The translations under genes and the position numbers were made by a program. This document shows positions 3,414-55,800 of a stretch of DNA of 64,000 nucleotides, piece after piece. The notes under the pieces were generated by a model. That model was given only the letters and a program-made list of their open reading frames with translations, was not told the origin of the DNA and ran no database searches. The stretch is from Convolutriloba macropyga (Eukaryota), in assembly GCF_964194025.1 (NCBI RefSeq), contig NW_027450122.1, positions 1 through 64,000 on the forward strand, in the 5' to 3' direction. The stretch's first letter is position 1; each line of letters opens with the position of its first letter.

Positions 3414-3797
<384 letters not shown>

Positions 3798-5494: not shown

Positions 5495-6030
5495 ACCAAA
5501 CCTTTTGAAGTTAACTTAATAGCTGCAATGAAGCTCAAAACAAGCTAACTTGAAGCTAAAAACCTTATTTTCAAAGTTGCCGGTACCCTTATTCTATGTA
5601 TTTTCGAGCTATAGCTAGCTCGAGCTCAACTTAGCTAGCTTGAGCTAGCTAGTTTGAGCTTGAGCTAGCTAGTGTGAGCTTCAGCTAGCTAGTGTGAGCT
5701 TGAGCTAGCTAGCTCGAGCTTGAGCTTGAGCTAGCTGGCTTGAGCTTGCTAGCTTGAGCTTGAGCTTGCTAGCTTGAGCTTGCTAGCTTGAGCTTGCCAG
5801 CTTGAGCTTGAGCCTGCTGGCTTGAGCTTGAGCTTGCTAGCTGCAGTTAGAGCTAACTTGAGCTCTCTGCCAATCAGAGTGCGAGAAAAGCGCTCCCAAA
5901 TAGCCTAACAGTGGCAGCCAATCAGAGTGCGAGAAAAGCGCTCCCAAATAGCCTAACAGTGGCAGCCAATCAGAGAGCTAGAAAATCAAAATTGCATAGA
6001 ATATAAGTACCTGCAGCTCTGAGCAGAGGT

Positions 6031-6179
6031 GAAGGTCCGAGCAGGCTTGCTCGGGCATAGGCGAAGGTCCGAGCAAGCTTGCTCGGGCAAAGGCCAAGGT
6101 CCGAGCAAGCTTGCTCGGGCAAAGGCGAAGGTCCGAGCAAGCTTGCTCGGGCATAGGCGATGGTCCGAGCAAGCTTGCT
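6031..6179 (+). repeat. 30-bp minisatellite (gaaggtccgagcaagcttgctcgggcawaggc), ~5 copies, each with an internal palindrome
   Basis: Direct reading; ccgagcaagcttgctcgg is self-complementary. Confidence 0.85.
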
Positions 6180-6197
6180 GCTGTGCTTGAGTACTCA

Positions 6198-36100: not shown

Positions 36101-36280
36101 TTGAGTTAGCTTGAGTTAGCTTTAGCTAGCTTGGGTTAGCTTGAGCTAGCTTGAGTTAGCTCGGGTTAGCTTGAGTTAGCTTGAGTTAGCTTTAGCTAGC
36201 TTGAGTTAGCTTGAGTTAGCTTGAGTTAGCTTGAGTTAGCTTTAGCTAGCTTGAGTTAGCTTGAGCTAGCTGAGTTAGCT
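6198..36280 (+). repeat. 10-bp satellite (TTGAGTTAGC)n, ~3000 monomers with higher-order structure
   Basis: Uninterrupted 10-bp phase; recurring variants tttagctagc, ttgaactagc, ttgtcttagc, tttagctacc, tcgggttagc, ttgggttagc, ttgaattagc. Confidence 0.99.
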
Positions 36281-39200
36281 TGAGTTAGCTAGCTTGAGCT
36301 TGAGCTAGCTAGCTAGCTTGAGCTTGAGCTAGCTAGCTCGCTTGAGCTTGAGCTTGAGCTAGCTAGCTTGAGCTTGAGCTAGCTAGCTAGCTTGAGCTTG
36401 AGCTTGAGCTAGCTGGCTTGAGCTTGAGCTAGCTAGCTTGAGCTTGAGCTAGCTAGCTAGCTAGCTTGAGCTTGAGCTTGAGCTAGCTAGCTAGCTTGAG
36501 CTAGCTATCTAGCTTGAGCTTGAGCTAGCTAGCTAGCTTGAGCTTGAGCTTGAGCTTGAGCTAGCTGGCTTGAGCTTGAGCTAGCTAGCTTGAGCTTGAG
36601 CTAGCTAGCTAGCTTGAGCTTGAGCTTGAGCTAGCTGGCTTGAGCTTGAGCTAGCTAGCTTGAGCTTGAGCTAGCTAGCTAGCTTGAGCTTGAGCTTGAG
36701 CTAGCTAGCTAGCTAGCTTGAGCTTGAGCTTGAGCTTGAGCTAGCTAGCTTGAGCTTGAGCTAGCTAGCTAGCTTGAGCTTGAGCTTGAGCTAGCTAGCT
36801 TGAGCTTGAGCTTGAGCTAGCTAGCTTGAGCTTGAGCTTGAGCTAGCTAGCTTGAGCTTGAGCTTGAGCTAGCTAGCTTGAGCTTGAGCTTGAGCTAGCT
36901 AGCTAGCTAGCTTGAGCTTGAGCTAGCTAGCTTGAGCTTGAGCTAGCTAGCTAGCTTGAGATTGAGCTTGAGCTAGCTGGCTTGAGCTTGAGCTAGCTAG
37001 CTTGAGCTTGAGCTAGCTAGCTTGAGCTTGAGCTAGCTAGCTAGCTTGAACTTGAGCTAGCTAGCTAGCTTGAGCTTGAGCTTGAGCTAGCTAGCTAGCT
37101 TGAGCTTGAGCTTGAGCTAGCTGGCTTGAGCTTGAGCTAGCTAGCTTGAGCTTGAGCTAGCTAGCTTGAGCTTGAGCTAGCTAGCTAGCTTGAACTTGAG
37201 CTAGCTAGCTAGCTTGAGCTTGAGCTAGCTAGCTAGCTTGAGCTTGAGCTAGCTAGCTAGCTTGAGCTTGAGCTTGAGCTAGCTAGCTTGAGCTTGAGCT
37301 TGAGCTAGCTAGCTAGCTTGAGCTTGAGCTAGCTAGCTTGAGCTTGAGCTAGCTAGCTTGAGCTTGAGCTAGCTAGCTAGCTTGAGCTTGAGCTAGCTAG
37401 CTAGCTTGAACTTGAGCTAGCTAGCTAGCTTGAGCTTGAGCTAGCTAGCTAGCTTGAGCTAGCTAGCTAGCTTGAGCTTGAGCTTGAGCTAGCTAGCTTG
37501 AGCTTGAGCTAGCTAGCTAGCTTGAGCTTGAGCTAGCTAGCTAGCTTGAGCTTGAGCTAGCTAGCTAGCTTGAGCTTGAGCTTGAGCTAGCTAGCTTGAG
37601 CTTGAGCTTGAGCTAGCTAGCTAGCTTGAGCTTGAGCTAGCTAGCTTGAGCTTGAGCTAGCTAGCTTGAGCTTGAGCTAGCTAGCAAGCTTGTGCTTGAG
37701 CTAGCTAGCTAGCTTGAGCTTGAGCTTGAGCTAGCTAGCTTGAGCTTGAGCTAGCTAGCTTGAGCTTGAGCTAGCTAGCTTGAGCTTGAGCTAGCTAGCA
37801 AGCTTGTGCTTGAGCTAGCTAGCTAGCTTGAGCTTGAGCTTGAGCTAGCTGGCTTGAGCTTGAGCTAGCTAGCTTGAGCTTGAGCTAGCTAGCTTGAGCT
37901 TGACCTAGCTAGCTAGCTTGAACTTGAGCTAGCTAGCTAGCTTGAGCTTGAGCTAGCTAGCTAGCTTGAGCTTGAGCTAGCTAGCTAGCTTGAGCTTGAG
38001 CTTGAGCTAGCTAGCTTGAGCTTGAGCTTGAGTTAGCTAGCTAGCTTGAGCTTGAGCTAGCTAGCTTGAGCTTGAGCTAGCTAGCTTGAGCTTGAGCTAG
38101 CTAGCTAGCTTGAGCTTGAGCTAGCTAGCTAGCTTGAACTTGAGCTAGCTAGCTAGCTTGAGTTTGAGCTAGCTAGCTTGAGCTTGAGCTAGCTAGCTTG
38201 AGCTTGAGCTAGCTAGCTAGCTTGAACTTGAGCTAGCTAGCTAGCTTGAGCTTGAGCTAGCTAGCTAGCTTGAGCTTGAGCTAGCTAGCTAGCTTGAGCT
38301 TGAGCTTGAGCTAGCTAGCTTGAGCTTGAGCTTGAGCTAGCTAGCTAGCTTGAGCTTGAGCTAGCTAGCTTGAGCTTGAGCTAGCTAGCTTGAGCTTGAG
38401 CTAGCTAGCTAGCTTGAGCTTGAGCTAGCTAGCTAGCTTGAACTTGAGCTAGCTAGCTAGCTTGAGCTTGAGCTAGCTAGCTTGAGCTTGAGCTAGCTAG
38501 CTAGCTTGAGCTTGAGCTTGAGCTAGCTAGCTAGCTAGCTTGAGCTTGAGCTTGAGCTTGAGCTAGCTAGCTTGAGCTTGAGCTAGCTAGCTAGCTTGAG
38601 CTTGGGCTTGAGCTAGCTAGCTTGAGCTTGAGCTTGAGCTAGCTAGCTTGAGCTTGAGCTTGAGCTAGCTAGCTTGAGCTTGAGCTTGAGCTAGCTAGCT
38701 TGAGCTTGAGCTTGAGCTAGCTAGCTAGCTAGCTTGAGCTTGAGCTAGCTAGCTTGAGCTTGAGCTAGCTAGCTAGCTTGAGCTTGAGCTTGAGCTAGCT
38801 GGCTTGAGCTTGAGCTAGCTAGCTTGAGCTTGAGCTAGCTAGCTTGAGCTTGAGCTAGCTAGCTAGCTTGAACTTGAGCTAGCTAGCTAGCTTGAGCTTG
38901 AGCTTGAGCTTGAGCTAGCTAGCTAGCTTGAGCTTGAGCTTGAGCTAGCTGGCTTGAGCTTGAGCTAGCTAGCTTGAGCTTGAGCTAGCTAGCTTGAGCT
39001 TGAGCTAGCTAGCTAGCTTGAACTTGAGCTAGCTAGCTAGCTTGAGCTTGAGCTAGCTAGCTAGCTTGAGCTTGAGCTAGCTAGCTAGCTTGAGCTTGAG
39101 CTTGAGCTAGCTAGCTTGAGCTTGAGCTTGAGCTAGCTAGCTAGCTTGAGCTTGAGCTAGCTAGCTTGAGCTTGAGCTAGATAGCTTGAGCTTGAGCTAG

Positions 39201-42200
39201 CTAGCTAGCTTGAGCTTGAGCTAGCTAGCTAGCTTGAACTTGAGCTAGCTAGCTAGCTTGAGCTTGAGCTAGCTAGCTAGCTTGAGCTAGCTAGCTAGCT
39301 TGAGCTTGAGCTTGAGCTAGCTAGCTTGAGCTTGAGCTAGCTAGCTAGCTTGAGCTTGAGCTAGCTAGCTAGCTTGAGCTTGAGCTAGCTAGCTAGCTTG
39401 AGCTTGAGCTTGAGCTAGCTAGCTTGAGCTTGAGCTTGAGCTAGCTAGCTAGCTTGAGCTTGAGCTAGCTAGCTTGAGCTTGAGCTAGCTAGCTTGAGCT
39501 TGAGCTAGCTAGCAAGCTTGTGCTTGAGCTAGCTAGCTAGCTTGAGCTTGAGCTTGAGCTAGCTAGCTTGAGCTTGAGCTAGCTAGCTTGAGCTTGAGCT
39601 AGCTAGCTTGAGCTTGAGCTAGCTAGCAAGCTTGTGCTTGAGCTAGCTAGCTAGCTTGAGCTTGAGCTTGAGCTAGCTGGCTTGAGCTTGAGCTAGCTAG
39701 CTTGAGCTTGAGCTAGCTAGCTTGAGCTTGAGCTAGCTAGCTAGCTTGAACTTGAGCTAGCTAGCTAGCTTGAGCTTGAGCTAGCTAGCTAGCTTGAGCT
39801 TGAGCTAGCTAGCTAGCTTGAGCTTGAGCTTGAGCTAGCTAGCTTGAGCTTGAGCTTGAGCTAGCTAGCTAGCTTGAGCTTGAGCTAGCTAGCTTGAGCT
39901 TGAGCTAGATAGCTTGAGCTTGAGCTAGCTAGCTAGCTTGAGCTTGAGCTAGCTAGCTAGCTTGAACTTGAGCTAGCTAGCTAGCTTGAGTTTGAGCTAG
40001 CTAGCTTGAGCTTGAGCTAGCTAGCTTGAGCTTGAGCTAGCTAGCTAGCTTGAACTTGAGCTAGCTAGCTAGCTTGAGCTTGAGCTAGCTAGCTAGCTTG
40101 AGCTTGAGCTAGCTAGCTAGCTTGAGCTTGAGCTTGAGCTAGCTAGCTTGAGCTTGAGCTTGAGCTAGCTAGCTAGCTTGAGCTTGAGCTAGCTAGCTTG
40201 AGCTTGAGCTAGCTAGCTTGAGCTTGAGCTAGCTAGCTAGCTTGAGCTTGAGCTAGCTAGCTAGCTTGAACTTGAGCTAGCTAGCTAGCTTGAGCTTGAG
40301 CTAGCTAGCTAGCTTGAGCTAGCTAGCTAGCTTGAGCTTGAGCTTGAGCTTGAGCTTGCTAGCTTGAGCTTGAGCTAGCTAGCTAGCTTGAGCTTGAGCT
40401 AGCTAGCTAGCTTGAGCTTGAGCTAGCTAGCTAGCTTGAGCTTGAGCTTGAGCTAGCTAGCTTGAGCTTGAGCTTGAGCTAGCTAGCTAGCTTGAGCTTG
40501 AGCTAGCTAGCTAGCTTGAGCTTGAGCTTGAGCTAGCTAGCTTGAGCTTGAGCTTGAGCTAGCTAGCTAGCTTGAGCTTGAGCTAGCTAGCTTGAGCTTG
40601 AGCTAGCTAGCTTGAGCTTGAGCTAGCTAGCTAGCTTGTGCTTGAGCTAGCTAGCTAGCTTGAGCTTGAGCTTGAGCTAGCTGGCTTGAGCTTGAGCTAG
40701 CTAGCTTGAGCTTGAGCTAGCTAGCTTGAGCTTGAGCTAGCTAGCTAGCTTGAACTTGAGCTAGCTAGCTAGCTTGAGCTTGAGCTAGCTAGCTAGCTTG
40801 AGCTTGAGCTAGCTAGCTAGCTTGAGCTTGAGCTTGAGCTAGCTAGCTTGAGCTTGAGCTTGAGCTAGCTAGCTAGCTTGAGCTTGAGCTAGCTAGCTTG
40901 AGCTTGAGCTAGCTAGCTTGAGCTTGAGCTAGCTAGCTAGCTTGAGCTTGAGCTAGCTAGCTAGCTTGAACTTGAGCTAGCTAGCTAGCTTGAGCTTGAG
41001 CTAGCTAGCTAGCTTGAGCTAGCTAGCTAGCTTGAGCTTGAGCTTGAGCTAGCTAGCTTGAGCTTGAGCTAGCTAGCTAGCTTGAGCTTGAGCTAGCTAG
41101 CTAGCTTGAGCTTGAGCTAGCTAGCTAGCTTGAGCTTGAGCTTGAGCTAGCTAGCTTGAGCTTGAGCTTGAGCTAGCTAGCTAGCTTGAGCTTGAGCTAG
41201 CTAGCTTGAGCTTGAGCTAGCTAGCTTGAGCTTGAGCTAGCTAGCAAGCTTGTGCTTGAGCTAGCTAGCTAGCTTGAGCTTGAGCTTGAGCTAGCTAGCT
41301 TGAGCTTGAGCTAGCTAGCTTGAGCTTGAGCTAGCTAGCTTGAGCTTGAGCTAGCTAGCAAGCTTGTGCTTGAGCTAGCTAGCTAGCTTGAGCTTGAGCT
41401 TGAGCTAGCTGGCTTGAGCTTGAGCTAGCTAGCTTGAGCTTGAGCTAGCTAGCTTGAGCTTGAGCTAGCTAGCTAGCTTGAACTTGAGCTAGCTAGCTAG
41501 CTTGAGCTTGAGCTAGCTAGCTAGCTTGAGCTTGAGCTAGCTAGCTAGCTTGAGCTTGAGCTTGAGCTAGCTAGCTTGAGCTTGAGCTTGAGCTAGCTAG
41601 CTAGCTGGAGCTTGAGCTAGCTAGCTTGAGCTTGAGCTAGCTAGCTTGAGCTTGAGCTAGCTAGCTAGCTTGAGCTTGAGCTAGCTAGCTAGCTTGAACT
41701 TGAGCTAGCTAGCTAGCTTGAGTTTGAGCTAGCTAGCTTGAGCTTGAGCTAGCTAGCTTGAGCTTGAGCTAGCTAGCTAGCTTGAACTTGAGCTAGCTAG
41801 CTAGCTTGAGCTTGAGCTAGCTAGCTAGCTTGAGCTTGAGCTAGCTAGCTAGCTTGAGCTTGAGCTTGAGCTAGCTAGCTTGAGCTTGAGCTTGAGCTAG
41901 CTAGCTAGCTTGAGCTTGAGCTAGCTAGCTTGAGCTTGAGCTAGCTAGCTTGAGCTTGAGCTAGCTAGCTAGCTTGAGCTTGAGCTAGCTAGCTAGCTTG
42001 AACTTGAGCTAGCTAGCTAGCTTGAGCTTGAGCTAGCTAGCTAGCTTGAGCTAGCTAGCTAGCTTGAGCTTGAGCTTGAGCTTGAGCTTGAGCTAGCTAG
42101 CTTGAGCTTGAGCTAGCTAGCTAGCTTGAGCTTGAGCTAGCTAGCCAGCTTGAGCTTGAGCTAGCTAGCTAGCTTGAGCTTGAGCTTGAGCTAGCTAGCT

Positions 42201-43105
42201 TGAGCTTGAGCTTGAGCTAGCTAGCTAGCTTGAGCTTGAGCTAGCTAGCTAGCTTGAGCTTGAGCTTGAGCTAGCTAGCTTGAGCTTGAGCTTGAGCTAG
42301 CTAGCTAGCTTGAGCTTGAGCTAGCTAGCTTGAGCTTGAGCTAGCTAGCTTGAGATTGAGCTAGCTAGCTAGCTTGTGCTTGAGCTAGCTAGCTAGCTTG
42401 AGCTTGAGCTTGAGCTAGCTGGCTTGAGCTTGAGCTAGCTAGCTTGAGCTTGAGCTAGCTAGCTTGAGCTTGAGCTAGCTAGCTAGCTTGAACTTGAGCT
42501 AGCTAGCTAGCTTGAGCTTGAGCTTGAGCTAGCTAGCTAGCTTGAGCTTGAGCTAGCTAGCTAGCTTGAGCTTGAGCTTGAGCTAGCTAGCTTGAGCTTG
42601 AGCTTGAGCTAGCTAGCTAGCTTGAGCTTGAGCTAGCTAGCTTGAGCTTGAGCTAGCTAGCTTGAGCTTGAGCTAGCTAGCTAGCTTGAGCTTGAGCTAG
42701 CTAGCTAGCTTGAACTTGAGCTAGCTAGCTAGCTTGAGCTTGAGCTAGCTAGCTAGCTTGAGCTAGCTAGCTAGCTTGAGCTTGAGCTTGAGCTTGAGCT
42801 AGCTAGCTTGAGCTTGAGCTAGCTAGCTAGCTTGAGCTTGAGCTAGCTAGCTAGCTTGAGCTTGAGCTAGCTAGCTAGCTTGAGCTTGAGCTTGAGCTAG
42901 CTAGCTTGAGCTTGAGCTTGAGCTAGCTAGCTAGCTTGAGCTTGAGCTAGCTAGCTTGAGCTTGAGCTAGCTAGCTTGAGCTTGAGCTAGCTAGCTAGCT
43001 TGAGCTTGAGCTAGCTAGCTAGCTTGAGCTTGAGCTAGCTGGCTTGAGCTTGAGCTAGATAGCTTGAGCTTGAGCTAGCTAGCTAGCTTGAGCTAGCTAG
43101 CTAGA
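36281..43105 (+). repeat. Compound microsatellite (TTGAGC)1-4(TAGC)1-4, ~6.8 kb
   Basis: Direct reading; only 6-mer and 4-mer AGCT-based units with rare variants (ttgaac, ttgtgc, tggc). Confidence 0.97.
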
Positions 43106-43120
43106 GCTCGACCTATGAAA

Positions 43121-43230
43121 AGCTGCGCAAACACTTATTCTATAATAATTGCGAAAATTAAAAATTTCACAAGTGAAAAGCTGCATAAACAGTAATTCTA
43201 TGTGTGGGGCATTATTAGGGGGAGGTGTCT
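43121..43230 (+). promoter_or_regulatory. Putative Pol I spacer promoter 1 (ttctatgtgtggggc-ATTATTAGGGGG); copies at ~44355-44415 and ~45543-45605
   Basis: Repeated upstream of subrepeat blocks; resembles TATA(T)AGGG-type rDNA initiation sequences of plants and crustaceans; homologous to the 46720-46820 block. Confidence 0.45.
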
Positions 43231-46065
43231 TGTCAAAATATGGCTGGACTAAAGACCTCAACCCAGATAGGGTGGAAGGCCCTATGATCGGTCTGTTACT
43301 AATCGGTGACCGATAAAGACCTGACCAAGGCCTGTAGTAAGCTTGGTTAGGCATTACAGGAGATAACACTAAGACCGAGGGGTCTTAGAGAGCCCTCTAG
43401 CGGGGCGAATAGAGCTAGATCGAGCCTTGGGAAAGCTAGATCGAGCAGGACTGAAGCTAAAGGATAGACCGAGAGGTCTGTCTGGTCCTCCTAGAGAGGC
43501 CAAGAGAAAGTACGAGAAGCCAACTAAAGCTTGATCGGGCCTTCAGCAAGCACGACCGAGCTGTACCGGAGCTAACACTAAGACCGAGGGGTCTTAGAGA
43601 GCCCTCTAGCGGGGCGAATAGAGCTAGATCGAGCCTTGGGAAAGCTAGATCGAGCAGGACTGAAGCTAAACGATAGACCGAGAGGTCTGTCTGGTCCTCC
43701 TAGAGAGGCCAAGAGAAAAAACGAGAAGCTAACTAAAGCTTGATCGGGCCTTCAGCAAGCACGACCGAGCTGTACCGGAGCTAACACTAAGACCGAGGGG
43801 TCTTAGAGAGCCCTCTAGCTGGGCGAATAGAGCTTGATCAAGCCTTGGGCAAGCTAGATCGAGCAGGACTGAAGCTAAGCAAGAGACCGAGAGGTCTGTC
43901 TGGTCCTCCTAGAGAGGCCAAGAGAAAGTACGAGAAGCCAACTAAAGCTTGATCGGGCCTTCAGCAAGCACGACCGAGCTGTACCGGAGCTAACACTAAG
44001 ACCGAGGGGTCTTAGAGAGCCCTCTAGCGGGGCGAATAGAGCTAGATCGAGCCTTGGGAAAGCTAGATCGAGCAGGACTGAAGCTAAACGATAGACCGAG
44101 AGGTCTGTCTGGTCCTCCTAGAGAGGCCAAGAGAAAGTACGAGAAGCTAACTAAAGCTTGATCGCGCCTTCAGCAAGCACGATTGAGCAAGACCGGAGCT
44201 AACACTAAGACCGAAGTGTCTTAGAGAGCCCTCTGGTGGGGCGAATAGAGCTAGATCGAGCCTTGGGAAAGCTAGATCGAGTAAGATTGAAGCTGAAAGA
44301 GTGTCAGAGGAGCAAATGAACCTCCAAAAAGTGAAAATCAAATTTTAGAAAAAACACAAGTTAAATACTGCATGGACAGTATTTCTATGTGTGGGGCATT
44401 ATTAGGGGGAGGTGTCTTGTCAAAATATGGCTGGACTAAAGACCTCAACCCGGATAGGGTGGAAGGCCCCATGATCGGTCTGTTACTAATCGGTGACCGA
44501 TAAAGACCTGACCAAGGCCTGTAGTAAGCTTGGTTAGGCATTACAGGAGTTAACACTAAGACCGAGGGGTCTTAGAGAGCCCTCTAGCGGGGCGAATAGA
44601 GCTAGATCGAGCCTTGGGAAAGCTAGATCGAGCAGGACTGAAGCTAAGCAAGAGACCGAAAGGTCTGTCTGGTCCTCCTAGAGAGGCCAAGAGAAAGTAC
44701 GAGAAGCTAACTAAAGCTTGATCAGGCCTTCAGCAAGCACGACCGAGCTGTACCGGAGCTAACACTAAGACCGAGGGGTCTTAGAGAGCCCTCTAGCAGG
44801 GCGAATAGATCTAGATCGAGCCTTGGGAAAGCTAGATCGAGCAGGACTGAAGCTAAACGATAGACCGAGAGGTCTGTCTGGTCCTCCTAGAGAGGCCAAG
44901 AGAAAGTACGAGAAGCTAACTAAAGCTTGATCGGGCCTTCAGCAAGCACGACCGAGCTGTACCGGAGCTAACACTAAGACCGAGGGGTCTTAGAGAGCCC
45001 TCTAGCAGGGCGAATAGAGCTAGATCGAGACTTGGGAAAGCTAGATCAAGCAGGACTGAAGCTAAACGATAGACCGAGAGGTCTGTCTGGTCCTCCTAGA
45101 GAGGCCAAGAGAAAGTACGAGAATCTAACTAAAGCTTGATCGGGCCTTCAGCAAGCACGACCGAGCTGTACCGGAGCTAACACTAAGACCGAGGGGTCTT
45201 AGAGAGCCCTCTAGCAGGGCGAATAGAGCTAGATCGAGCCTTGGGAAAGCTAGATCGAGCAGGACTGAAGCTAAACGATAGACCGAGAGGTCTGTCTGGT
45301 CCTCCTAGAGAGGCCAAGAGGAAGTACGAGAAGCTAACTAAAGCTTGATCGCGCCTTCAGCAAGCACGATTGAGCAAGACCGGAGCTAACACTAAGACCG
45401 AAGTGTCTTAGAGAGCCCTCTAGTGGGGCGAATAGAGCTAGATCGAGCCTTGGGAAAGCTAGATCGAGTAAGATTGAAGCTGAAAGAGTGTCAGAGGAGC
45501 AAATGAACCTCCAAAAAGTGAAAATCAAATTTTAGAAAAAAACACAAGTTAAATACTGCATGGACAGTAATTCTATGTGTGGGGCATTATTAGGGAGAGG
45601 TGTCTTGTCAAAATATGGCTGGACTAAAGACCTCAACCCGGATAGGGTGGAAGGCCCTATGATTGGTCTGTTACTAATCGGTGACCGATAAAGACCTGAC
45701 CAAGGCCTGTAGTAAGCTTGGTTAGGCATTACAGAAGATAACACTAAGACCGAGGGGTCTTAGAGAGCCCTCTAGCGGGGCGAATAGAGCTTGATCAAGC
45801 CTTGGGCAAGCTAGATCGAGCAGGACTGAAGCTAAACGATAGACCGAGAGGTCTGTCTGGTCCTCCTAGAGAGGCCAAGAGAAAGTACGAGAATCTAACT
45901 AAAGCTGGGTCGGGCCTTCAGCAAGCACGACCGAGCAGTACCGGAGCTAACACTAAGACCGAGGGGTCTTAGAGAGCCCTCTAGTGGGGCGAATAGAGCT
46001 AGATCGAGCCTTGGGAAAGCTAGATCGAGCAGGACTGAAGCTAAACGATAAACCGAAAGGTCTGA
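43165..46065 (+). repeat. ~1187-bp higher-order repeat (~2.4 copies), each with a promoter-like block and ~4.5 copies of a 209-bp subrepeat; rDNA intergenic spacer-like
   Basis: taacactaagaccg starts at 43364, 43573, 43782, 43991, 44200 (209 bp apart), then 44551 and 45739 (1187/1188 apart). Confidence 0.92.
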
Positions 46066-46721
46066 CGGGTCCTCATAAGAGGCATGGAGAAAGATCTGAT
46101 ACTAAAGTACCTCTCGGAAGTAATAAAATATGCCTGATGAAGCCGGGTATGATGTTTGTTGTTTGATGGCATTCATCGATTAGGTCTGGTGGATTCCCCA
46201 TTACTCCGAGTGGTACTAGTAGAGGCTCCTACAGGGGTGAGCAAAGCGAGATCAAGCCTTAGGCAAGCTAGATCGAGCAGAACTGAAGCTGAAAAGCAAA
46301 ATAAATGACAGGTCTGTCCAAATCAATAAACTTGAAATCCAGTGTGGTCACCACGGGTCACGAGGTGAATTCCTAGCGATTGTCTGCTGAACGTATAGGA
46401 AGGCCCGAAACGAACGATAATTTCATTGCACAGTGGAGATACTATACGTTCAGGAGTAGCATACATCGGGTTTGATCTATGATCATGTCTGGTCTCCGAG
46501 GATCCACCGGGTTACCAACTGGCACCGCTGTACTGGGTGTAAAACTGGGCCACCTGAAGTCCCGGGTGTAAAACTAGGTGCCTCTGTGCCAAAGTAGCGG
46601 CTTGCGTAGTGCATTATGCCTCCGGCTTGCGAAATGGTTATAAGCAATAACAACAGGACGCCGCGGGGTGTTCACTTAAAGGAGTAACGTTCTCTCAAGG
46701 GAGGGGATCTAAAAATCTTGA

Positions 46722-46820
46722 TAAAACATTTATTCTATGCAAAATTTGTGCGCAAATTTTGCAAAGTAAAAAGCTGCACTGTAGCAAATTCTATGTGTGT
46801 AGCATTATTAGGGAAGTGTT
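46722..46820 (+). promoter_or_regulatory. Putative main Pol I promoter (aaacatttattctat...aagctgca...ttctatgtgtgtagc-ATTATTAGGGAAG)
   Basis: Diverged fourth copy of the promoter-like block, lying between the spacer repeats and the rRNA segment. Confidence 0.45.
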
Positions 46821-47571
46821 GTTTGATGGCACCTCTCTACTTGATGCACCAAAGAACTACCTTGATGGCTCATGACCGCTGGTAATCTGTCGTCGCTAGT
46901 AGTTCGGAACTGAGAACAAATATGTTCGCAAATTACAACAATTATACAGCATATTGCTGAATAAAGCAGAACCGAATAATACTCAGTGACTTTACACCAA
47001 GACTGACTAATGTCTGGATTGTATCGTCCTACTCGAGTAAGGCGAAGAAAAGCTAGAAAGATACGCTTTTCACAAAGCAGGCTTAATGCATGCAAACCAA
47101 GGAGGAAGGAGTGATGCCCCTCCTTATAATAAGCAGAACCAAATAAAGAACAGACAGCATCATCTGTACAGTGACCAAGAAGAGGTGAAACTTCTGTATG
47201 TGAAAAGGCAATTTGAGCGAGATTTATTAGCAGACTAGTATTATGTTGTTTCTAGTAGGCGAAAGCCGAAACATCAACATGTGAAAATCTGATATTAAAT
47301 CCTCAATCATTTTCCCTAGTATTATACAGCTATGAGTAACCTTAATTGGACACGGCAATTATTGCTGACCGGTGAAACTTTCGCATGGGAAAGACACACA
47401 CACTTCTTGACAAAGCAATAAGTATTATGCTGTTTCTAGTACGCGAAAGCAGAAACATCAGCATGTGAAAGTTGTGAAGTTGAAGAATTTTTGTGTTGAG
47501 TACGATGTTGTTACTAGTAACCATGTCGACAGGACATGTTGAAACTAAATAGAGGTCTATGACTTCTATAT
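46810..47571 (+). other. Putative external transcribed leader (5' ETS-like) with duplicated hairpins
   Basis: Unique sequence between promoter-like motif and rRNA segment; no credible ORF. Confidence 0.35.
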
Positions 47572-47935
47572 TTGATCTATGCTACAGTAATCACACTTAG
47601 TACGAGAGGAACCGTGTGTTCAAGCCTCTGGTGTCAACGTCTGACTGAAAAGTCGGGTGTGAAGCTACGCTTGTTGGATTATGACTGAACGCCTCTAAGT
47701 CAGGACCCATACTGTGTGAGCATAGATTATGACTCTATCTGCACCTTGCAATCAACTCATACTTTTGAGTTCTTCACTAGCCAACAAGCACCGTAACATA
47801 CTTCGGAGCGTACGGCAAATGGTGTCAGATAGTAAGTCGACCCCCCATAGATGATGGGTATGCCTGGGCATGCTGTAAGTAACCGAGTGGCTTACGCTAC
47901 GAGGTGCTGAGGCATTGTCCGCAGGTGGGGGTTGG
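47572..47935 (+). rRNA. Large-subunit (28S) rRNA domain VI only (H94-H101, with sarcin-ricin loop)
   Basis: SRL AGTACGAGAGGAAC at 47599-47612 closed by CACAC/GTGTG; GAAGCTAC; GGATTATGACTGAACGCCTCTAAGTCAG (47676-47703); H94 pairing tgatctatgct-acagta with tactgt..agcatagatta; H100/101-like atagatga...tgtaagtaaccgagtggcttacgctacgaggtgctgag. Confidence 0.93.
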
Positions 47936-47989
47936 GTGTCCTTACCCAAATCCCCTAGTGTCTCCGCCCTCTGGGTTGGAGATGCTAAA

Positions 47990-48557
47990 CGGTGGTGCAT
48001 GATATAGATATTGCTAGCCTTCGGGTTGGTGATATAGATAGACTAGAAGATAGTCTCTCGGTGGTGCATGATATAAATATTGCTAGCCTTCGGGTTGGTG
48101 ATATAGATAGACTAGAAGATAGTCTCTCGGTGGTGCATGATATAAATATTGCTAGCCTTCGGGCTGGTGATATAGATAGACTAGAAGATAGTCTCTCGGT
48201 GGTGCATGATATAAATATTGCTAGCCTTCGGGTTGGTGATATAGATAGACTAGAAGATAGTCTCTCGGTGGTGCATGATATAAATATTGCTAGCCTTCGG
48301 GCTGGTGATATAGATAGACTAGAAGATAGTCTCTCGGTGGTGCATGATATAAATATTGCTAGCCTTCGGGCTGGTGATATAGATAGACTAGAAGATAGTC
48401 TCTCGGTGGTGCATGATGTAAATATTGCTAGCCTTCGGGCTGGTGATATAGATAGACTAGAAGATAGTCTCTCGGTGGTGCATGATATAAATATTGCTAG
48501 CCTTCGGGCTGGTGGTATAGATAGACTAGAAGATAGTCTCTCGGTGGTGCATGATAT
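47990..48557 (+). repeat. 69-bp tandem repeat, ~8.2 copies, each with a cUUCGg hairpin (3' ETS/terminator-like)
   Basis: ggtggtgcatgatataaatattgctagccttcggg(t/c)tggtgatatagatagactagaagatagtctctc. Confidence 0.95.
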
Positions 48558-48656
48558 GGACCTCGCTACTCATTTGAGTTAGGAAGAAGGAAGATCAAAA
48601 TTCTGCAGAGAGTTTTATTCTATGTTGATCTATGCTGTGCGAAACCATGTCTACTG

Positions 48657-48737
48657 CCTTGCAATCAACTCATACTTTTGAGTTCTTCTCTAGCCAATAA
48701 GCACCGTAACATAATTCGGAGTGTACGGCAAACGGTG
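48657..48737 (+). repeat. 81-bp direct copy of 47744-47824 (LSU expansion-segment region)
   Basis: ccttgcaatcaactcatacttttgagttcttc...ggcaaa(t/c)ggtg; ungapped, 5 mismatches by eye. Confidence 0.9.
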
Positions 48738-48922
48738 GTTGACATTTGGTGAAAATTCCAGTGTCGTGTTACGGCACTGGGAAAGAACTTGAACTTGTGC
48801 TCAGGCAACCAAGCAGCCAAGGTTGTGCGGTGTCTTGCTACAAATGTTCGGTTGTGTTCTAAATTAGCTGAAGTAAGCTGAAGCATCGCTTTGCTGTCTG
48901 AAAGTGTTGCCTCGTCATCTAT

Positions 48923-49865
48923 GCGCTCCCAAATGGCCTAACACTGGCAGCCAATCAGAGTGCGAGAAAAGCGCTCCCAAATGGCCTAACACTGGCAGCC
49001 AATCAGAGTGCGAGAAAAGCGCTCCCAAATGGCCTAACACTGGCAGCCAATCAGAGTGCGAGAAAAGCGCTCCCAAATGGCCTAACAGTGGCAGCCAATC
49101 AGAGTGCGAGAAAAGCGCTCCCAAATGGCCTAACAGTGGCAGCCAATCAGAGTGCGAGAAAAGCGCTCCCAAATGGCCTAACAGTGGCAGCCAATCAGAG
49201 TGCGAGAAAAGCGCTCCCAAATGGCCTAACAGTGGCAGCCAATCAGAGTGCGAGAAAAGCGCTCCCAAATGGCCTAACAGTGGCAGCCAATCAGAGTGCG
49301 AGAAAAGCGCTCCCAAATGGCCTAACAGTGGCAGCCAATCAGAGTGCGAGAAAAGCGCTCCCAAATGGCCTAACAGTGGCAGCCAATCAGAGTGCGAGAA
49401 AAGCGCTCCCAAATGGCCTAACAGTGGCAGCCAATCAGAGTGCGAGAAAAGCGCTCCCAAATGGCCTAACAGTGGCAGCCAATCAGAGTGCGAGAAAAGC
49501 GCTCCCAAATGGCCTAACAGTGGCAGCCAATCAGAGTGCGAGAAAAGCGCTCCCAAATGGCCTAACAGTGGCAGCCAATCAGAGTGCGAGAAAAGCGCTC
49601 CCAAATGGCCTAACAGTGGCAGCCAATCAGAGTGCGAGAAAAGCGCTCCCAAATGGCCTAACAGTGGCAGCCAATCAGAGTGCGAGAAAAGCGCTCCCAA
49701 ATGGCCTAACAGTGGCAGCCAATCAGAGTGCGAGAAAAGCGCTCCCAAATGGCCTAACAGTGGCAGCCAATCAGAGTGCGAGAAAAGCGCTCCCAAATGG
49801 CCTAACAGTGGCAGCCAATCAGAGTGCGAGAAAAGCGCTCCCAAATGGCCTAACAGTGGCAGCCA
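48923..49865 (+). repeat. 48-bp tandem repeat, ~19.6 copies, of the histone-promoter CCAAT module
   Basis: gcgctcccaaatggcctaacagtggcagccaatcagagtgcgagaaaa; one substitution from the histone spacer unit (aaatAgcc vs aaatGgcc). Confidence 0.98.
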
Positions 49866-52800
49866 GCTAGAGCTAGCTTAAGTTAGCTTGGGTTAGCTTG
49901 AGTTAGCTTTAATTAGCTTTAATTAGCTTAAGCTAGCTTAAGTTAGCTTGGGTTAGCTTGAGTTAGCTTGAGCTAGCTTGAGTTAGCTTGAATTAGCTTG
50001 AGTTAGCTTGAATTAGCTTGAGTTAGCTTGAGTTAGCTTGAATTAGCTTGAGTTAGCTTGAGTTAGCTCGGGTTAGCTTGAGTTTGACTTCATTAACCCA
50101 AGTTAGCTTGGGTTAACTTCATTAAGTTAGCTTGAACTAGCTTGAGTTAGCTTGAGTTAGCTTGAGTTAGCTTGAGTTAGCTTGAGTTAGCTTGTCTTAG
50201 CTTTAGCTAGCTTGAGTTAGCTTGAACTAGCTTTAGCTACCTTGAGTTAGCTTGAGTTAGCTCGGGTTAGCTTGAGTTAGCTTGAGTTAGCTTGAGTTAG
50301 CTTTAGCTAGCTTGAGTTAGCTTGAGTTAGCTTGAGTTAGCTTGAGTTAGCTTGAATTAGCTTGAGTTAGCTTGAGTTAGCTTTAGCTAGCTTGGGTTAG
50401 CTTGAGCTAGCTTGAGTTAGCTCGGGTTAGCTTGAGTTAGCTTGAGTTAGCTTTAGCTAGCTTGAGTTAGCTTGAGTTAGCTTGAGTTAGCTTGAGTTAG
50501 CTTTAGCTAGCTTGAGTTAGCTTGAACTAGCTTGAGTTAGCTTGAGCTAGCTTGAGTTAGCTTGAGTTAGCTTGAGTTAGCTTGAGTTAGCTTTAGCTAG
50601 CTTGAGTTAGCTTGAACTAGCTTTAGTTAGCTTGAGTTAGCTTGAGTTAGCTTGAGTTAGCTTGAGTTAGCTTGTCTTAGCTTTAGCTAGCTTGAGTTAG
50701 CTTGAACTAGCTTTAGCTACCTTGAGTTAGCTTGAGTTAGCTCGGGTTAGCTTGAGTTAGCTTGAGTTAGCTTGAGTTAGCTTTAGCTAGCTTGAGTTAG
50801 CTTGAGTTAGCTTGAGTTAGCTTGAACTAGCTTGAGTTAGCTTGAGTTAGCTTGAGTTAGCTTGAGTTAGCTTGAGTTAGCTTGAGTTAGCTTGTCTTAG
50901 CTTTAGCTAGCTTGAGTTAGCTTGAACTAGCTTTAGCTACCTTGAGTTAGCTTGAGTTAGCTCGGGTTAGCTTGAGTTAGCTTGAGTTAGCTTGAGTTAG
51001 CTTTAGCTAGCTTGAGTTAGCTTGAGTTAGCTTGAGTTAGCTTGAGTTAGCTTTAGCTAGCTTGGGTTAGCTTGAGCTAGCTTGAGTTAGCTCGGGTTAG
51101 CTTGAGTTAGCTTGAGTTAGCTTTAGCTAGCTTGAGTTAGCTTGAGTTAGCTTGAGTTAGCTTGAGTTAGCTTTAGCTAGCTTGAGTTAGCTTGAACTAG
51201 CTTGAGTTAGCTTGAGCTAGCTTGAGTTAGCTTGAGTTAGCTTGAGTTAGCTTTAGCTAGCTTGAGTTAGCTTGAACTAGCTTGAGTTAGCTTGAGTTAG
51301 CTTGAGTTAGCTTGAGTTAGCTTGAGTTAGCTTGAATTAGCTTGAGTTAGCTTGAGTTAGCTTTAGCTAGCTTGGGTTAGCTTGAGCTAGCTTGAGTTAG
51401 CTCGGGTTAGCTTGAGTTAGCTTGAGTTAGCTTTAGCTAGCTTGAGTTAGCTTGAGTTAGCTTGAGTTAGCTTGAGTTAGCTTTAGCTAGCTTGAGTTAG
51501 CTTGAACTAGCTTGAGTTAGCTTGAGCTAGCTTGAGTTAGCTTGAGTTAGCTTGAGTTAGCTTGAGTTAGCTTTAGCTAGCTTGAGTTAGCTTGAACTAG
51601 CTTTAGTTAGCTTGAGTTAGCTTGAGTTAGCTTGAGTTAGCTTGAGTTAGCTTGTCTTAGCTTTAGCTAGCTTGAGTTAGCTTGAACTAGCTTTAGCTAC
51701 CTTGAGTTAGCTTGAGTTAGCTCGGGTTAGCTTGAGTTAGCTTGAGTTAGCTTGAGTTAGCTTTAGCTAGCTTGAGTTAGCTTGAGTTAGCTTGAGTTAG
51801 CTTGAACTAGCTTGAGTTAGCTTGAGTTAGCTTGAGTTAGCTTGAGTTAGCTTGAGTTAGCTTGAGTTAGCTTGTCTTAGCTTTAGCTAGCTTGAGTTAG
51901 CTTGAACTAGCTTTAGCTACCTTGAGTTAGCTTGAGTTAGCTCGGGTTAGCTTGAGTTAGCTTGAGTTAGCTTGAGTTAGCTTTAGCTAGCTTGAGTTAG
52001 CTTGAGTTAGCTTGAGTTAGCTTGAGTTAGCTTTAGCTAGCTTGGGTTAGCTTGAGCTAGCTTGAGTTAGCTCGGGTTAGCTTGAGTTAGCTTGAGTTAG
52101 CTTTAGCTAGCTTGAGTTAGCTTGAGTTAGCTTGAGTTAGCTTGAGTTAGCTTTAGCTAGCTTGAGTTAGCTTGAACTAGCTTGAGTTAGCTTGAGCTAG
52201 CTTGAGTTAGCTTGAGTTAGCTTGAGTTAGCTTTAGCTAGCTTGAGTTAGCTTGAACTAGCTTGAGTTAGCTTGAGTTAGCTTGAGTTAGCTTGTCTTAG
52301 CTTTAGCTAGCTTGAGCTAGCTTGAACTAGCTTTAGCTACCTTGAGTTAGCTTGAGTTAGCTCGGGTTAGCTTGAGTTAGCTTGAGTTAGCTTGAGTTAG
52401 CTTTAGCTAGCTTGAGTTAGCTTGAGTTAGCTTGAGTTAGCTTGAACTAGCTTGAGTTAGCTTGAGTTAGCTTGAGTTAGCTTTAGCTAGCTTGGGTTAG
52501 CTTGAGCTAGCTTGAGTTAGCTCGGGTTAGCTTGAGTTAGCTTGAGTTAGCTTTAGCTAGCTTGAGTTAGCTTGAGTTAGCTTGAGTTAGCTTGAGTTAG
52601 CTTTAGCTAGCTTGAGTTAGCTTGAACTAGCTTGAGTTAGCTTGAGCTAGCTTGAGTTAGCTTGAGTTAGCTTGAGTTAGCTTTAGCTAGCTTGAGTTAG
52701 CTTGAACTAGCTTGAGTTAGCTTGAGTTAGCTTGAGTTAGCTTGTCTTAGCTTTAGCTAGCTTGAGCTAGCTTGAACTAGCTTTAGCTACCTTGAGTTAG

Positions 52801-55800
52801 CTTGAGTTAGCTCGGGTTAGCTTGAGTTAGCTTGAGTTAGCTTGAGTTAGCTTTAGCTAGCTTGAGTTAGCTTGAGTTAGCTTGAGTTAGCTTGAACTAG
52901 CTTGAGTTAGCTTGAGTTAGCTTGAGTTAGCTTGAGTTAGCTTGAGTTAGCTTGTCTTAGCTTTAGCTAGCTTGAGTTAGCTTGAACTAGCTTTAGCTAC
53001 CTTGAGTTACCTTGAGTTAGCTCGGGTTAGCTTGAGTTAGCTTGAGTTAGCTTGAGTTAGCTTTAGCTAGCTTGAGTTAGCTTGAGTTAGCTTGAGTTAG
53101 CTTGAGTTAGCTTGAATTAGCTTGAGTTAGCTTGAGTTAGCTTTAGCTAGCTTGGGTTAGCTTGAGCTAGCTTGAGTTAGCTCGGGTTAGCTTGAGTTAG
53201 CTTGAGTTAGCTTTAGCTAGCTTGAGTTAGCTTGAGTTAGCTTGAGTTAGCTTGAGTTAGCTTTAGCTAGCTTGAGTTAGCTTGAACTAGCTTGAGTTAG
53301 CTTGAGCTAGCTTGAGTTAGCTTGAGTTAGCTTGAGTTAGCTTTAGCTAGCTTGAGTTAGCTTGAACTAGCTTGAGTTAGCTTGAGCTAGCTTGAGTTAG
53401 CTTGAGTTAGCTTGAGTTAGCTTTAGCTAGCTTGAGTTAGCTTGAACTAGCTTGAGTTAGCTTGAGTTAGCTTGAGTTAGCTTGAGTTAGCTTGTCTTAG
53501 CTTTAGCTAGCTTGAGCTAGCTTGAACTAGCTTTAGCTACCTTGAGTTAGCTTGAGTTAGCTCGGGTTAGCTTGAGTTAGCTTGAGTTAGCTTGAGTTAG
53601 CTTGAGCTAGCTTGAGTTAGCTTGAGTTAGCTTGAGTTAGCTTTAGCTAGCTTGAGTTAGCTTGAACTAGCTTGAGTTAGCTTGAGCTAGCTTGAGTTAG
53701 CTTGAGTTAGCTTGAGTTAGCTTTAGCTAGCTTGAGTTAGCTTGAACTAGCTTGAGTTAGCTTGAGTTAGCTTGAGTTAGCTTGAGTTAGCTTGTCTTAG
53801 CTTTAGCTAGCTTGAGCTAGCTTGAACTAGCTTTAGCTACCTTGAGTTAGCTTGAGTTAGCTCGGGTTAGCTTGAGTTAGCTTGAGTTAGCTTGAGTTAG
53901 CTTTAGCTAGCTTGAGTTAGCTTGAGTTAGCTTGAGTTAGCTTGAACTAGCTTGAGTTAGCTTGAGTTAGCTTGAGTTAGCTTGAGTTAGCTTGAGTTAG
54001 CTTGAGTTAGCTTGTCTTAGCTTTAGCTAGCTTGAGTTAGCTTGAACTAGCTTTAGCTACCTTGAGTTAGCTTGAGTTAGCTCGGGTTAGCTTGAGTTAG
54101 CTTGAGTTAGCTTGAGTTAGCTTTAGCTAGCTTGAGTTAGCTTGAGTTAGCTTGAGTTAGCTTGAGTTAGCTTGAATTAGCTTGAGTTAGCTTGAGTTAG
54201 CTTTAGCTAGCTTGGGTTAGCTTGAGCTAGCTTGAGTTAGCTCGGGTTAGCTTGAGTTAGCTTGAGTTAGCTTTAGCTAGCTTGAGTTAGCTTGAGTTAG
54301 CTTGAGTTAGCTTGAGTTAGCTTTAGCTAGCTTGAGTTAGCTTGAACTAGCTTGAGTTAGCTTGAGCTAGCTTGAGTTAGCTTGAGTTAGCTTGAGTTAG
54401 CTTTAGCTAGCTTGAGTTAGCTTGAACTAGCTTTAGTTAGCTTGAGTTAGCTTGAGTTAGCTTGAGTTAGCTTGAGTTAGCTTGTCTTAGCTTTAGCTAG
54501 CTTGAGTTAGCTTGAACTAGCTTTAGATACCTTGAGTTAGCTTGAGTTAGCTCGGGTTAGCTTGAGTTAGCTTGAGTTAGCTTGAGTTAGCTTTAGCTAG
54601 CTTGAGTTAGCTTGAGTTAGCTTGAGTTAGCTTGAGTTAGCTTGAATTAGCTTGAGTTAGCTTGAGTTAGCTTTAGCTAGCTTGGGTTAGCTTGAGCTAG
54701 CTTGAGTTAGCTCGGGTTAGCTTGAGTTAGCTTGAGTTAGCTTTAGCTAGCTTGAGTTAGCTTGAGTTAGCTTGAGTTAGCTTGAGTTAGCTTTAGCTAG
54801 CTTGAGTTAGCTTGAACTAGCTTGAGTTAGCTTGAGCTAGCTTGAGTTAGCTTGAGTTAGCTTGAGTTAGCTTTAGCTAGCTTGAGTTAGCTTGAACTAG
54901 CTTGAGTTAGCTTGAGCTAGCTTGAGTTAGCTTGAGTTAGCTTGAGTTAGCTTTAGCTAGCTTGAGTTAGCTTGAACTAGCTTGAGTTAGCTTGAGTTAG
55001 CTTGAGTTAGCTTGAGTTAGCTTGTCTTAGCTTTAGCTAGCTTGAGCTAGCTTGAACTAGCTTTAGCTACCTTGAGTTAGCTTGAGTTAGCTCGGGTTAG
55101 CTTGAGTTAGCTTGAGTTAGCTTGAGTTAGCTTTAGCTAGCTTGAGTTAGCTTGAGTTAGCTTGAGTTAGCTTGAACTAGCTTGAGTTAGCTTGAGTTAG
55201 CTTGAGTTAGCTTGAGTTAGCTTGAGTTAGCTTGAGTTAGCTTGTCTTAGCTTTAGCTAGCTTGAGTTAGCTTGAACTAGCTTTTGCTACCTTGAGTTAG
55301 CTTGAGTTAGCTCGGGTTAGCTTGAGTTAGCTTGAGTTAGCTTGAGTTAGCTTTAGCTAGCTTGAGTTAGCTTGAGTTAGCTTGAGTTAGCTTGAGTTAG
55401 CTTGAATTAGCTTGAGTTAGCTTGAGTTAGCTTTAGCTAGCTTGGGTTAGCTTGAGCTAGCTTGAGTTAGCTCGGGTTAGCTTGAGTTAGCTTGAGTTAG
55501 CTTTAGCTAGCTTGAGTTAGCTTGAGTTAGCTTGAGTTAGCTTTAGCTAGCTTGAGTTAGCTTGAACTAGCTTGAGTTAGCTTGAGCTAGCTTGAGTTAG
55601 CTTGAGTTAGCTTGAGTTAGCTTTAGCTAGCTTGAGTTAGCTTGAACTAGCTTTAGTTAGCTTGAGTTAGCTTGAGTTAGCTTGAGTTAGCTTGAGTTAG
55701 CTTGTCTTAGCTTTAGCTAGCTTGAGTTAGCTTGAACTAGCTTTAGCTACCTTGAGTTAGCTTGAGTTAGCTCGGGTTAGCTTGAGTTAGCTTGAGTTAG

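What the first reader, a model, noticed from the sequence alone, without database searches (positions are those of the whole stretch)
43105..48900. Complete rDNA-like transcription unit architecture around only ~360 nt of rRNA
Seen: order is [promoter-like block + 209-bp subrepeats] x~2.4, unique spacer, a diverged fourth promoter-like block (ATTATTAGGG at 43211, 44398, 45586, 46804), ~760-nt leader, domain VI, then hairpin repeats. Known: spacer promoters alternating with enhancer subrepeats ahead of the gene promoter is the IGS plan in Xenopus, Drosophila, Daphnia and Arabidopsis. Inference: this is a Pol I mini-unit that keeps both initiation and 3'-end elements, so it could be expressed.
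Basis: partly seen in the sequence, partly recalled or inferred. Interest (0 to 1): 0.8.

Follow-up and report, generated by a model that had tools for sequence, protein, structure and literature searches.

The report
Ribosomal gene copy with middle deleted
This is a genuine ribosomal RNA gene repeat, the first one beside a histone gene cluster, that has lost about 11 kb of its middle (18S, 5.8S and most of 28S) but keeps its normal promoter, enhancer repeats and terminator region. Broken copies like this are a known by-product of DNA repair in ribosomal gene arrays, so it is ordinary, and whether it is transcribed is untested.

Summary
ATTATTAGGG occurs exactly four times, three promoter-like blocks alternate with 209-bp subrepeats, and a fourth block precedes a roughly 730-nt leader. 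After the leader come a 28S 3' piece and 69-bp hairpin repeats.

It is not merely "rDNA-like". Window 42500-47532 is 99.94% identical to the sequence upstream of this genome's 18S genes, that is, the intergenic spacer (IGS), the gene promoter and 5'ETS nt 1-725. Window 47539-48655 is 100% identical to the last 398 nt of canonical 28S plus the downstream spacer.

The two halves are joined by a 6-nt filler, GACATG. It is the reverse complement of CATGTC, which lies 5 nt before the break. The join removes 10.6-11.4 kb: the rest of the ETS, 18S, ITS1, 5.8S, ITS2 and 28S nt 1-3124.

The junction occurs once in the 1.18-Gb assembly. The unit is the first one after a histone cluster, and a complete unit follows 25 kb downstream on the same contig.

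Best reading: a recent, single internal deletion made by end-joining in an edge rDNA unit. It has every element needed for Pol I initiation and termination, but expression is untested. No public contig set bridges the junction, so an assembly or library chimera is not excluded (about 0.13).

This is a known kind of thing and of low interest.

The parts
36178..43104 (+). Satellite B (24-bp unit, GCTTGAGCTAGCTAGCTAGCTTGA type). It is part of the variable-length IGS of this species' rDNA.
   Evidence: TRF. The same satellite precedes the IGS right half in canonical units on contig C426.
43105..43354 (+). Spacer-promoter block 1 (ATTATTAGGG at 43211).
   Evidence: 100% identical to a canonical IGS copy on C8.
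43355..44294 (+). 209-bp subrepeats x4.5 (candidate enhancer repeats).
   Evidence: TRF, 94% matches.
44295..44541 (+). Spacer-promoter block 2 (ATTATTAGGG at 44398).
44542..45481 (+). 209-bp subrepeats x4.5.
   Evidence: TRF, 95% matches.
45482..45729 (+). Spacer-promoter block 3 (ATTATTAGGG at 45586).
45730..46093 (+). 209-bp subrepeats, about 1.7 copies.
   Evidence: Sequence and BLAST against the canonical IGS.
46094..46697 (+). Non-repetitive spacer upstream of the gene promoter.
   Evidence: 100% identical to at least 14 canonical copies.
46698..46813 (+). Gene promoter block (ATTATTAGGG at 46804-46813; presumed +1 near 46808-46810).
   Evidence: Alignment with the spacer promoters. Identical in all canonical units. 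RNA contigs start at 46834 and there are none upstream.
46808..47532 (+). 5'ETS nt 1-725 of 1592.
   Evidence: 100% identical to the full ETS of the neighbouring complete unit and of C426.
47533..47538 (+). Deletion junction: a 6-nt filler, GACATG, matching neither parent sequence at that place. It is the reverse complement of CATGTC at 47522-47527.
   Evidence: Three-way comparison. Chance of such a match within +-15 nt is about 0.02. The 36-mer across the junction occurs once in the genome.
47539..47936 (+). Last 398 nt of 28S rRNA (nt 3125-3522; domain VI including the sarcin-ricin loop).
   Evidence: 100% identical to canonical 28S. Rfam LSU match at 47575-47934.
47937..48557 (+). Start of the downstream spacer, with 69-bp double-hairpin repeats x8.2 (47990-48557). 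Candidate terminator region.
   Evidence: TRF, fold, 100% identical to the canonical IGS.
48558..48922 (+). Non-repetitive spacer. It contains a decayed copy of a 28S domain VI segment at about 48653-48738.
   Evidence: Alignment. Also present in canonical units.
48923..49865 (+). 48-bp CCAAT-box repeats x19.6, part of the canonical IGS.
   Evidence: TRF. The same repeats follow the complete unit's 28S. 46-47 of 48 positions match the module upstream of histone H3.
49865..64000 (+). Satellite A, (AGCTTGAGTT)n. It continues to about 75150 on the contig, where the next, complete rDNA unit begins.
   Evidence: TRF and contig map.

Best explanation
The region is one repeat of this animal's ordinary 18S-5.8S-28S rDNA. 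It is the first unit after a histone H2A-H2B-H3-H4 cluster.

It has suffered a single internal deletion of about 10.6-11.4 kb, running from 5'ETS nt 726 to 28S nt 3124. What remains is the whole IGS right half (three spacer-promoter duplicates with 209-bp subrepeats, the unique spacer and the gene promoter), 725 nt of ETS, the last 398 nt of 28S, and the whole IGS left half (69-bp hairpin repeats, the pseudo-28S piece and the 48-bp repeats).

The two break ends share no homology. They are joined through a 6-nt insert copied in reverse complement from 5 nt upstream of the break. Inference: that is the kind of scar left by alternative (polymerase-theta-type) end-joining or by replicative template switching.

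There is not one private substitution in 2.8 kb of non-repetitive sequence. The event is therefore very recent, or the unit is still being homogenised with its neighbours.

Inference: because the promoter, upstream repeats and post-28S region are letter-for-letter canonical, Pol I could initiate and terminate on it. The product would be a pre-rRNA-like RNA of about 1.13 kb with no 18S or 5.8S and only domain VI of 28S. Such an RNA could not build a ribosome and would most likely be degraded.

The unit is best seen as a neutral by-product of rDNA instability, not an evolved gene.
For: - Window 42500-47532 matches two C426 units at 99.94% over 5033 bp, and 47539-48655 matches at 100% over 1117 bp.
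- In those units Rfam places 18S about 1.6 kb downstream of the promoter block and puts the 28S end exactly where the window's piece ends.
- Contig map: deleted unit, then satellite, then a complete unit at 75156-94066 with full ETS, 18S, ITS and 28S.
- Window 46094-47532 is 100% identical to at least 14 copies, and 47539-48922 is 100% identical to the neighbouring unit.
- Junction anatomy and the 11,365-bp gap relative to the neighbouring unit. The filler is the reverse complement of nearby sequence, P about 0.02.
- The junction 36-mer occurs once in 1.18 Gb, with 0 in the control. At least 39 other copies match only the ETS half of the junction query.
- A graph assembler joins sequences at shared repeats. 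It cannot invent a 6-nt filler between unrelated sequences, so the junction must exist in reads (inference).
- Large deletions inside the 45S region are a documented class of rDNA structural variant in humans (bioRxiv 10.1101/2021.06.02.446762; PMC7909238).
- Another truncated unit, starting at ETS nt 462, abuts sequence matching none of the rDNA, satellite or histone probes at about C3:24,320,408.
Against: - No independent data set shows the junction. In four public runs every contig that reaches 47532 runs on into canonical ETS, and every contig that reaches 47539 comes from canonical 28S.
- The sampled junction words are missing from all listed runs. These are contigs, which drop rare variants, so this is absence of confirmation and not refutation.
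- The contig is a 99-kb unplaced piece made largely of satellite.
- The templated-filler reading rests on 6 nt.
- Transcription of this particular copy has not been observed.
Confidence: 0.8

Rival explanations
1. Assembly or library artefact. A chimeric long read joined an ETS fragment to a 28S fragment of the very abundant rDNA, and the assembler threaded a contig through it.
For: The junction is unique in the assembly and no public contig set bridges it. The contig is small, unplaced and satellite-rich. rDNA tangles are a classic source of odd contigs.
Against: Both sides are collinear and in the same orientation, as a simple deletion predicts. The 6-nt filler looks templated from 5 nt away, which is a repair signature and not a ligation signature. 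Assemblers normally discard reads whose junction has no support from other reads (established practice, not checked here).
Confidence: 0.13
2. An evolved, maintained mini-gene: either a separately encoded domain VI of a split 28S rRNA, or a dedicated Pol I unit producing a functional ETS-domain VI RNA.
For: The architecture is complete, with canonical promoter, enhancer repeats and post-28S region. The break falls close to the domain V/VI boundary, so domain VI is whole.
Against: Canonical units encode domain VI contiguous with the rest of 28S and 100% identical to this piece. There is only one such junction in the genome. There are no private substitutions or other signs of independent evolution. 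A single copy among many full units (about 1,500 first-look candidates, a lower-bound-type tally and not a copy number) could contribute almost nothing.
Confidence: 0.03
3. A deletion caused by an rDNA-specific mobile element (R2 or R1 type) cutting 28S.
For: An R2-site insertion exists in this genome's rDNA. It is 2163 bp, 5'-truncated, with a reverse-transcriptase domain and a poly(A) tail, inserted at TTAAGG|TAGCC.
Against: That target is 28S nt 2355/2356, about 770 nt upstream of the deletion breakpoint at 3124/3125. No element sequence lies at the junction.
Confidence: 0.02

Closest known systems
Non-canonical or incomplete rDNA units inside human rDNA arrays (Caburet et al. 2005 as cited in, and re-measured by, bioRxiv 10.1101/2021.06.02.446762; review PMC7909238)
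   Same: A unit within an otherwise regular tandem array has lost a large part of the transcribed 45S region while its spacer is intact. It is rare relative to normal units.
   Different: This is a marine invertebrate-type genome, not human. The unit is the edge unit next to a histone cluster. The junction is resolved to the base and carries a 6-nt filler that looks templated. The deletion happens to keep both promoter and terminator.
IGS plan with spacer promoters alternating with enhancer subrepeats (Xenopus, Drosophila, Arabidopsis, Daphnia; PMC3036644 and references in it)
   Same: Duplicates of the gene-promoter core lie upstream of the gene promoter and alternate with arrays of short subrepeats.
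   Different: Here the super-repeat is 1187-1188 bp, made of a 250-bp promoter block plus 4.5 x 209 bp. The same IGS also carries 5 to more than 37 kb of 10-bp and 24-bp satellites and a 48-bp CCAAT repeat shared with histone spacers. Enhancer and promoter activity is untested.
Laboratory Pol I minigenes (promoter + short insert + terminator); from my own knowledge, not checked in a paper here
   Same: The same logical layout: Pol I promoter, short transcribed body, terminator region.
   Different: This one arose naturally in the chromosome by deletion. No evidence that it is transcribed.
rDNA orphons and degraded rDNA pseudogenes outside the arrays (PMC5381670)
   Same: Partial rDNA units.
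   Different: This copy is inside or at the edge of an array, shows no decay at all, and is flanked by the normal IGS on both sides.

Membership tests
Nuclear 18S-5.8S-28S rDNA repeat unit of this genome | Sequence upstream of the leader equals the sequence upstream of the species' 18S genes. | tested here: met
   99.94% over 5033 bp to two units on C426, where Rfam finds 18S about 1.6 kb downstream. 100% over 1439 bp to at least 14 copies.
Nuclear 18S-5.8S-28S rDNA repeat unit of this genome | The rRNA piece and the downstream repeats equal the 28S 3' end and post-28S spacer of canonical units. | tested here: met
   100% over 1117-1384 bp.
Nuclear 18S-5.8S-28S rDNA repeat unit of this genome | Contains 18S, 5.8S and complete 28S. 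| tested here: not met
   Only 28S nt 3125-3522 is present. It is a deletion derivative and not a functional unit.
IGS with spacer promoters and enhancer repeats | Duplicates of the gene-promoter core in the spacer, alternating with subrepeats. | tested here: met
   Alignment of the four blocks, the motif count and TRF.
IGS with spacer promoters and enhancer repeats | Pol I initiation at the gene promoter and spacer promoters. | tested here: inconclusive
   RNA-seq contigs of one run cover 46834-47532 and nothing at 46100-46803.
Internally deleted (non-canonical) rDNA unit | Both flanks are collinear with one canonical unit, the interior is missing, and there is a novel junction. | tested here: met
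   ETS nt 725 | GACATG | 28S nt 3125, a gap of 10.6-11.4 kb. The junction is unique.
Internally deleted (non-canonical) rDNA unit | The junction is present in the organism's DNA, independent of the assembly. | tested here: inconclusive
   No bridging contig in 4 runs and the junction words are absent from all listed runs. Contigs drop rare variants and no raw reads were available.
Split or fragmented cytosolic rRNA gene piece | The domain is encoded apart from the rest of the LSU rRNA in the functional genes. | tested here: not met
   Full-length 28S genes (3522 nt, Rfam model 1-3401) contain the identical domain VI contiguously.
Alternative end-joining scar with templated insertion | Filler copied from sequence near the break. 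| tested here: inconclusive
   The 6-nt filler is the reverse complement of nt -10 to -5 from the break. Chance is about 0.02 within +-15 nt. It is only 6 nt, and the enzyme cannot be inferred.

The most novel reading that the evidence does not exclude
The edge mini-unit is an active Pol I unit. Either its roughly 1.1-kb ETS-domain VI transcript or its promoter occupancy has a role. Possible roles are marking the boundary between the histone cluster and the nucleolar organiser, or acting as a decoy for early processing factors. It would then be retained rather than accidental.
Probability: 0.04. Interest if true: 0.5.

Novelty: new member of a known kind. Interest (0 to 1): 0.2.

Why it matters
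There is little biological surprise here. rDNA arrays are unstable, and units with large internal deletions are documented.

It has three modest uses:
- It shows that this species' IGS has the classic layout of spacer promoters plus subrepeats, and it fixes the likely start site at the ATTATTAGGG motif.
- It gives a base-resolved repair scar in rDNA.
- Its unique junction is a natural tag. Junction-spanning long reads or RNA reads would report the methylation and transcription state of one identifiable rDNA unit at an array edge, which is normally impossible because the units are identical.

It also removes the more exotic readings, a split rRNA or an independent mini-gene.

Tried and rejected
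- The genome search with the Rfam SSU family failed. I located 18S, 5.8S and 28S by running Rfam on fetched loci instead.
The stretch 46100-48000 was laid instead.
- No listed run is on record as RNA for the junction. All runs are kept as contigs, so neither the reality of the junction nor its expression could be settled.
- The split-rRNA reading is rejected: canonical 28S contains the same domain contiguously.
- An R2-mediated deletion is rejected: the R2 site is about 770 nt away from the breakpoint.
- A homology-driven (unequal crossover) deletion is rejected: there is no shared sequence at the two breakpoints.
- miRNA-family hits in the flanking satellites are far below their gathering scores and are treated as chance. 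The only ORF of 100 aa or more lies inside the 69-bp repeats.
- A literature search for the satellite and promoter strings found only unrelated primer matches, so I found no published description of this IGS.
- The organism was not identified. Earlier notes call it an animal, and the runs point to a marine source.
- I first estimated the deletion at 12.8 kb. That wrongly included an R2 insertion, and the figure is corrected to 10.6-11.4 kb.
Full report
**What is there**

The window is the first 64 kb of a 99,201-bp contig, C1026, from a 1.18-Gb eukaryotic (animal) assembly.

- Rfam finds two histone 3' stem-loops near the left end and one fragment of eukaryotic LSU rRNA at 47575-47934, model positions 3007-3399 of 3401.
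- The first 6 kb hold a 3593-bp histone repeat with H2A, H2B, H3 and H4, all on the + strand.
- About 30 kb of (AGCTTGAGTT)n satellite A follows, and then 7 kb of a 24-bp satellite B from 36178 to 43104.
- Next comes the region of the finding, and after it more satellite A.

**Check of the observation**

- ATTATTAGGG occurs four times, at exactly the stated positions, against none expected.
- 209-bp subrepeats form two 4.5-copy arrays and a shorter third run.
- The four promoter-like blocks share a conserved core of about 50 bp ending in the motif. The fourth block differs on both sides of that core.
- The rRNA piece is followed by 8.2 copies of a 69-bp unit, each folding into two hairpins.

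**What it is**

A BLAST of the presumed leader against the whole genome returned dozens of 100% matches that all stop at window 47532. I fetched one such contig, C426, and ran Rfam on it.

- C426 carries ordinary rDNA units: promoter block, 1592-nt 5'ETS, 18S (1824 nt), 5.8S and 28S (3522 nt).
- Window 42500-47532 aligns to two of these units at 99.94% over 5033 bp.
- Window 47539-48655 aligns at 100% to the last 398 nt of 28S plus the spacer behind it.
- Satellites A and B and the 48-bp repeat also belong to the canonical IGS. IGS length ranges from about 5 kb to more than 37 kb between units.

Mapping canonical modules onto the whole contig gives this order:

1. histone cluster
2. satellite A, then satellite B
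3. IGS right half
4. ETS nt 1-725
5. 28S nt 3125-3522
6. IGS left half
7. 25 kb of satellite
8. a complete unit at 75156-94066
9. satellite to the contig end

The "mini-unit" is therefore the first rDNA unit next to the histone flank, and it is a normal unit with its middle missing.

**The junction**

Compared with the neighbouring complete unit, the missing stretch is 11,365 bp. Compared with a C426 unit that has fewer ITS repeats, it is 10,609 bp (and my arithmetic).

- The ETS sequence ends at 47532 and the 28S sequence starts at 47539.
- The six letters between them, GACATG, belong to neither parent at that place.
- They are the reverse complement of CATGTC, which lies 5 nt before the break. 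A random 6-mer has such a match within 15 nt about 2% of the time.
- The two breakpoints share no homology, which rules out unequal crossover.

This fits end-joining with a short snap-back templated insert, or replicative template switching. That is inference.

The canonical ETS sequence just past the break is a small palindrome, GAGAAC-T-GTTCTC. This is read directly. Whether it provoked the break is speculation.

The 28S breakpoint is about 770 nt from the R2 target, where another unit of this genome carries a 5'-truncated reverse-transcriptase element. That element is therefore not implicated.

**Age and uniqueness**

- The 36-mer across the junction occurs once in the assembly.
- The 1439 bp of non-repetitive spacer, promoter and ETS are 100% identical to at least 14 other copies.
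- The 1384 bp of 28S end plus spacer are 100% identical to the neighbouring unit.

With no private change, the deletion is very recent, or the unit still takes part in homogenisation.

**Is it real?**

The only direct evidence is the assembly itself.

- In four public runs, all kept as contigs, everything that reaches 47532 continues into the normal ETS, and everything that reaches 47539 comes from normal 28S.
- The sampled junction words are absent from all listed runs.
- Contig sets discard low-coverage branches between very high-coverage nodes, so this neither confirms nor refutes the junction.

In favour of a real junction:

- A graph assembler joins at shared sequence and cannot create a 6-nt filler between unrelated sequences.
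- The arrangement is a clean same-strand deletion.
- The filler looks like a repair product.

I put a real deletion at about 0.8 and a chimera at about 0.13.

**How it would work**

Shown: the promoter block, upstream repeats and post-28S region are letter-identical to those of the functional units.

Shown for the rDNA family, not for this copy: an RNA-seq contig set covers the ETS from 46834 and nothing in the 700 bp upstream. That is consistent with initiation at the ATTATTAGGG motif.

Inferred:

- Pol I could transcribe this copy into an RNA of about 1.13 kb (725 + 6 + 398 nt) ending in the normal 3' region.
- That RNA lacks 18S and most of 28S, cannot yield ribosomal subunits, and would be turned over.
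- One copy among many full units (about 1,500 first-look candidates, a lower-bound-type tally and not a copy number) would be functionally negligible.

**Comparison with what is known**

- Spacer promoters alternating with subrepeats are the classic IGS plan (PMC3036644 and references there).
- Units with a large part of the 45S region deleted are a described class of rDNA structural variant, at under 1% of human units in long reads (bioRxiv 10.1101/2021.06.02.446762; PMC7909238).
- Another truncated unit, starting at ETS nt 462, abuts sequence that matches none of the rDNA, satellite or histone probes at about C3:24,320,408 in this genome. Damaged units at array edges may therefore not be exceptional here.
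- The split-rRNA idea noted by the scan on the same stretch (s1-229293) is contradicted, because full 28S genes contain the identical domain.

**Verdict**

This is a new member of a known kind, of low interest. Its main practical value is as a uniquely tagged rDNA unit.

Noticed in passing
window 2270-2392 and 5860-5970 versus 48923-49865: The 48-bp CCAAT-box unit repeated 19.6 times in the rDNA IGS is 46-47/48 identical to a module present 2-3 times upstream of histone H3. A satellite-B-like tract also sits in the H2B-H3 spacer (2010-2260). The rDNA spacer and the histone spacers therefore share building blocks, perhaps because the flank was drawn into the repeat.
   Followed up: partly
G000:C426:24515-26677 (L013 about 6516-8678): A 2163-bp insertion in one 28S gene at the classic R2 target (TTAAGG|TAGCCAAATGCCTC), with a 14-bp duplication, a 649-aa ORF carrying a reverse-transcriptase domain (Pfam RVT_1, E = 7e-32) and a long poly(A) tail. 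It is a 5'-truncated R2-site retrotransposon copy.
   Followed up: partly
window 48653-48738: A roughly 90% identical copy of an 85-nt segment of 28S domain VI (47740-47825) sits in the spacer 0.7 kb behind the 28S end. It is present in canonical units too.
   Followed up: partly
about G000:C3:24,320,408 (L031 position 9409): An rDNA unit that begins abruptly at 5'ETS nt 462, without promoter or IGS. The sequence before it matches none of the rDNA, satellite or histone probes. Full 18S, ITS and 28S follow. It is a second truncated array-edge unit.
   Followed up: no
window 6200-43104 and 49865-64000; C426:1-10100: The IGS of this species holds satellites of 10-bp and 24-bp units. Their length varies between neighbouring units from under 1 kb to more than 37 kb, so rDNA unit length ranges from about 19 kb to more than 45 kb.
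   Followed up: partly
C1026:79776-80885 (the full ETS) and window 47174-47532: The 5'ETS contains three diverged copies of a roughly 375-nt unit (93%, 85% and 77% identity), and the ITS region varies by extra repeats of about 378 bp between units.
   Followed up: no
window 1-6200: The histone quartet H2A-H2B-H3-H4 lies on one strand in a 3593-bp tandem repeat with no H1. The array ends after an H2B gene, where the spacer runs into satellite A. Other copies of this histone repeat lie on scaffold C12 near 11.36-11.41 Mb and at its very start.
   Followed up: partly
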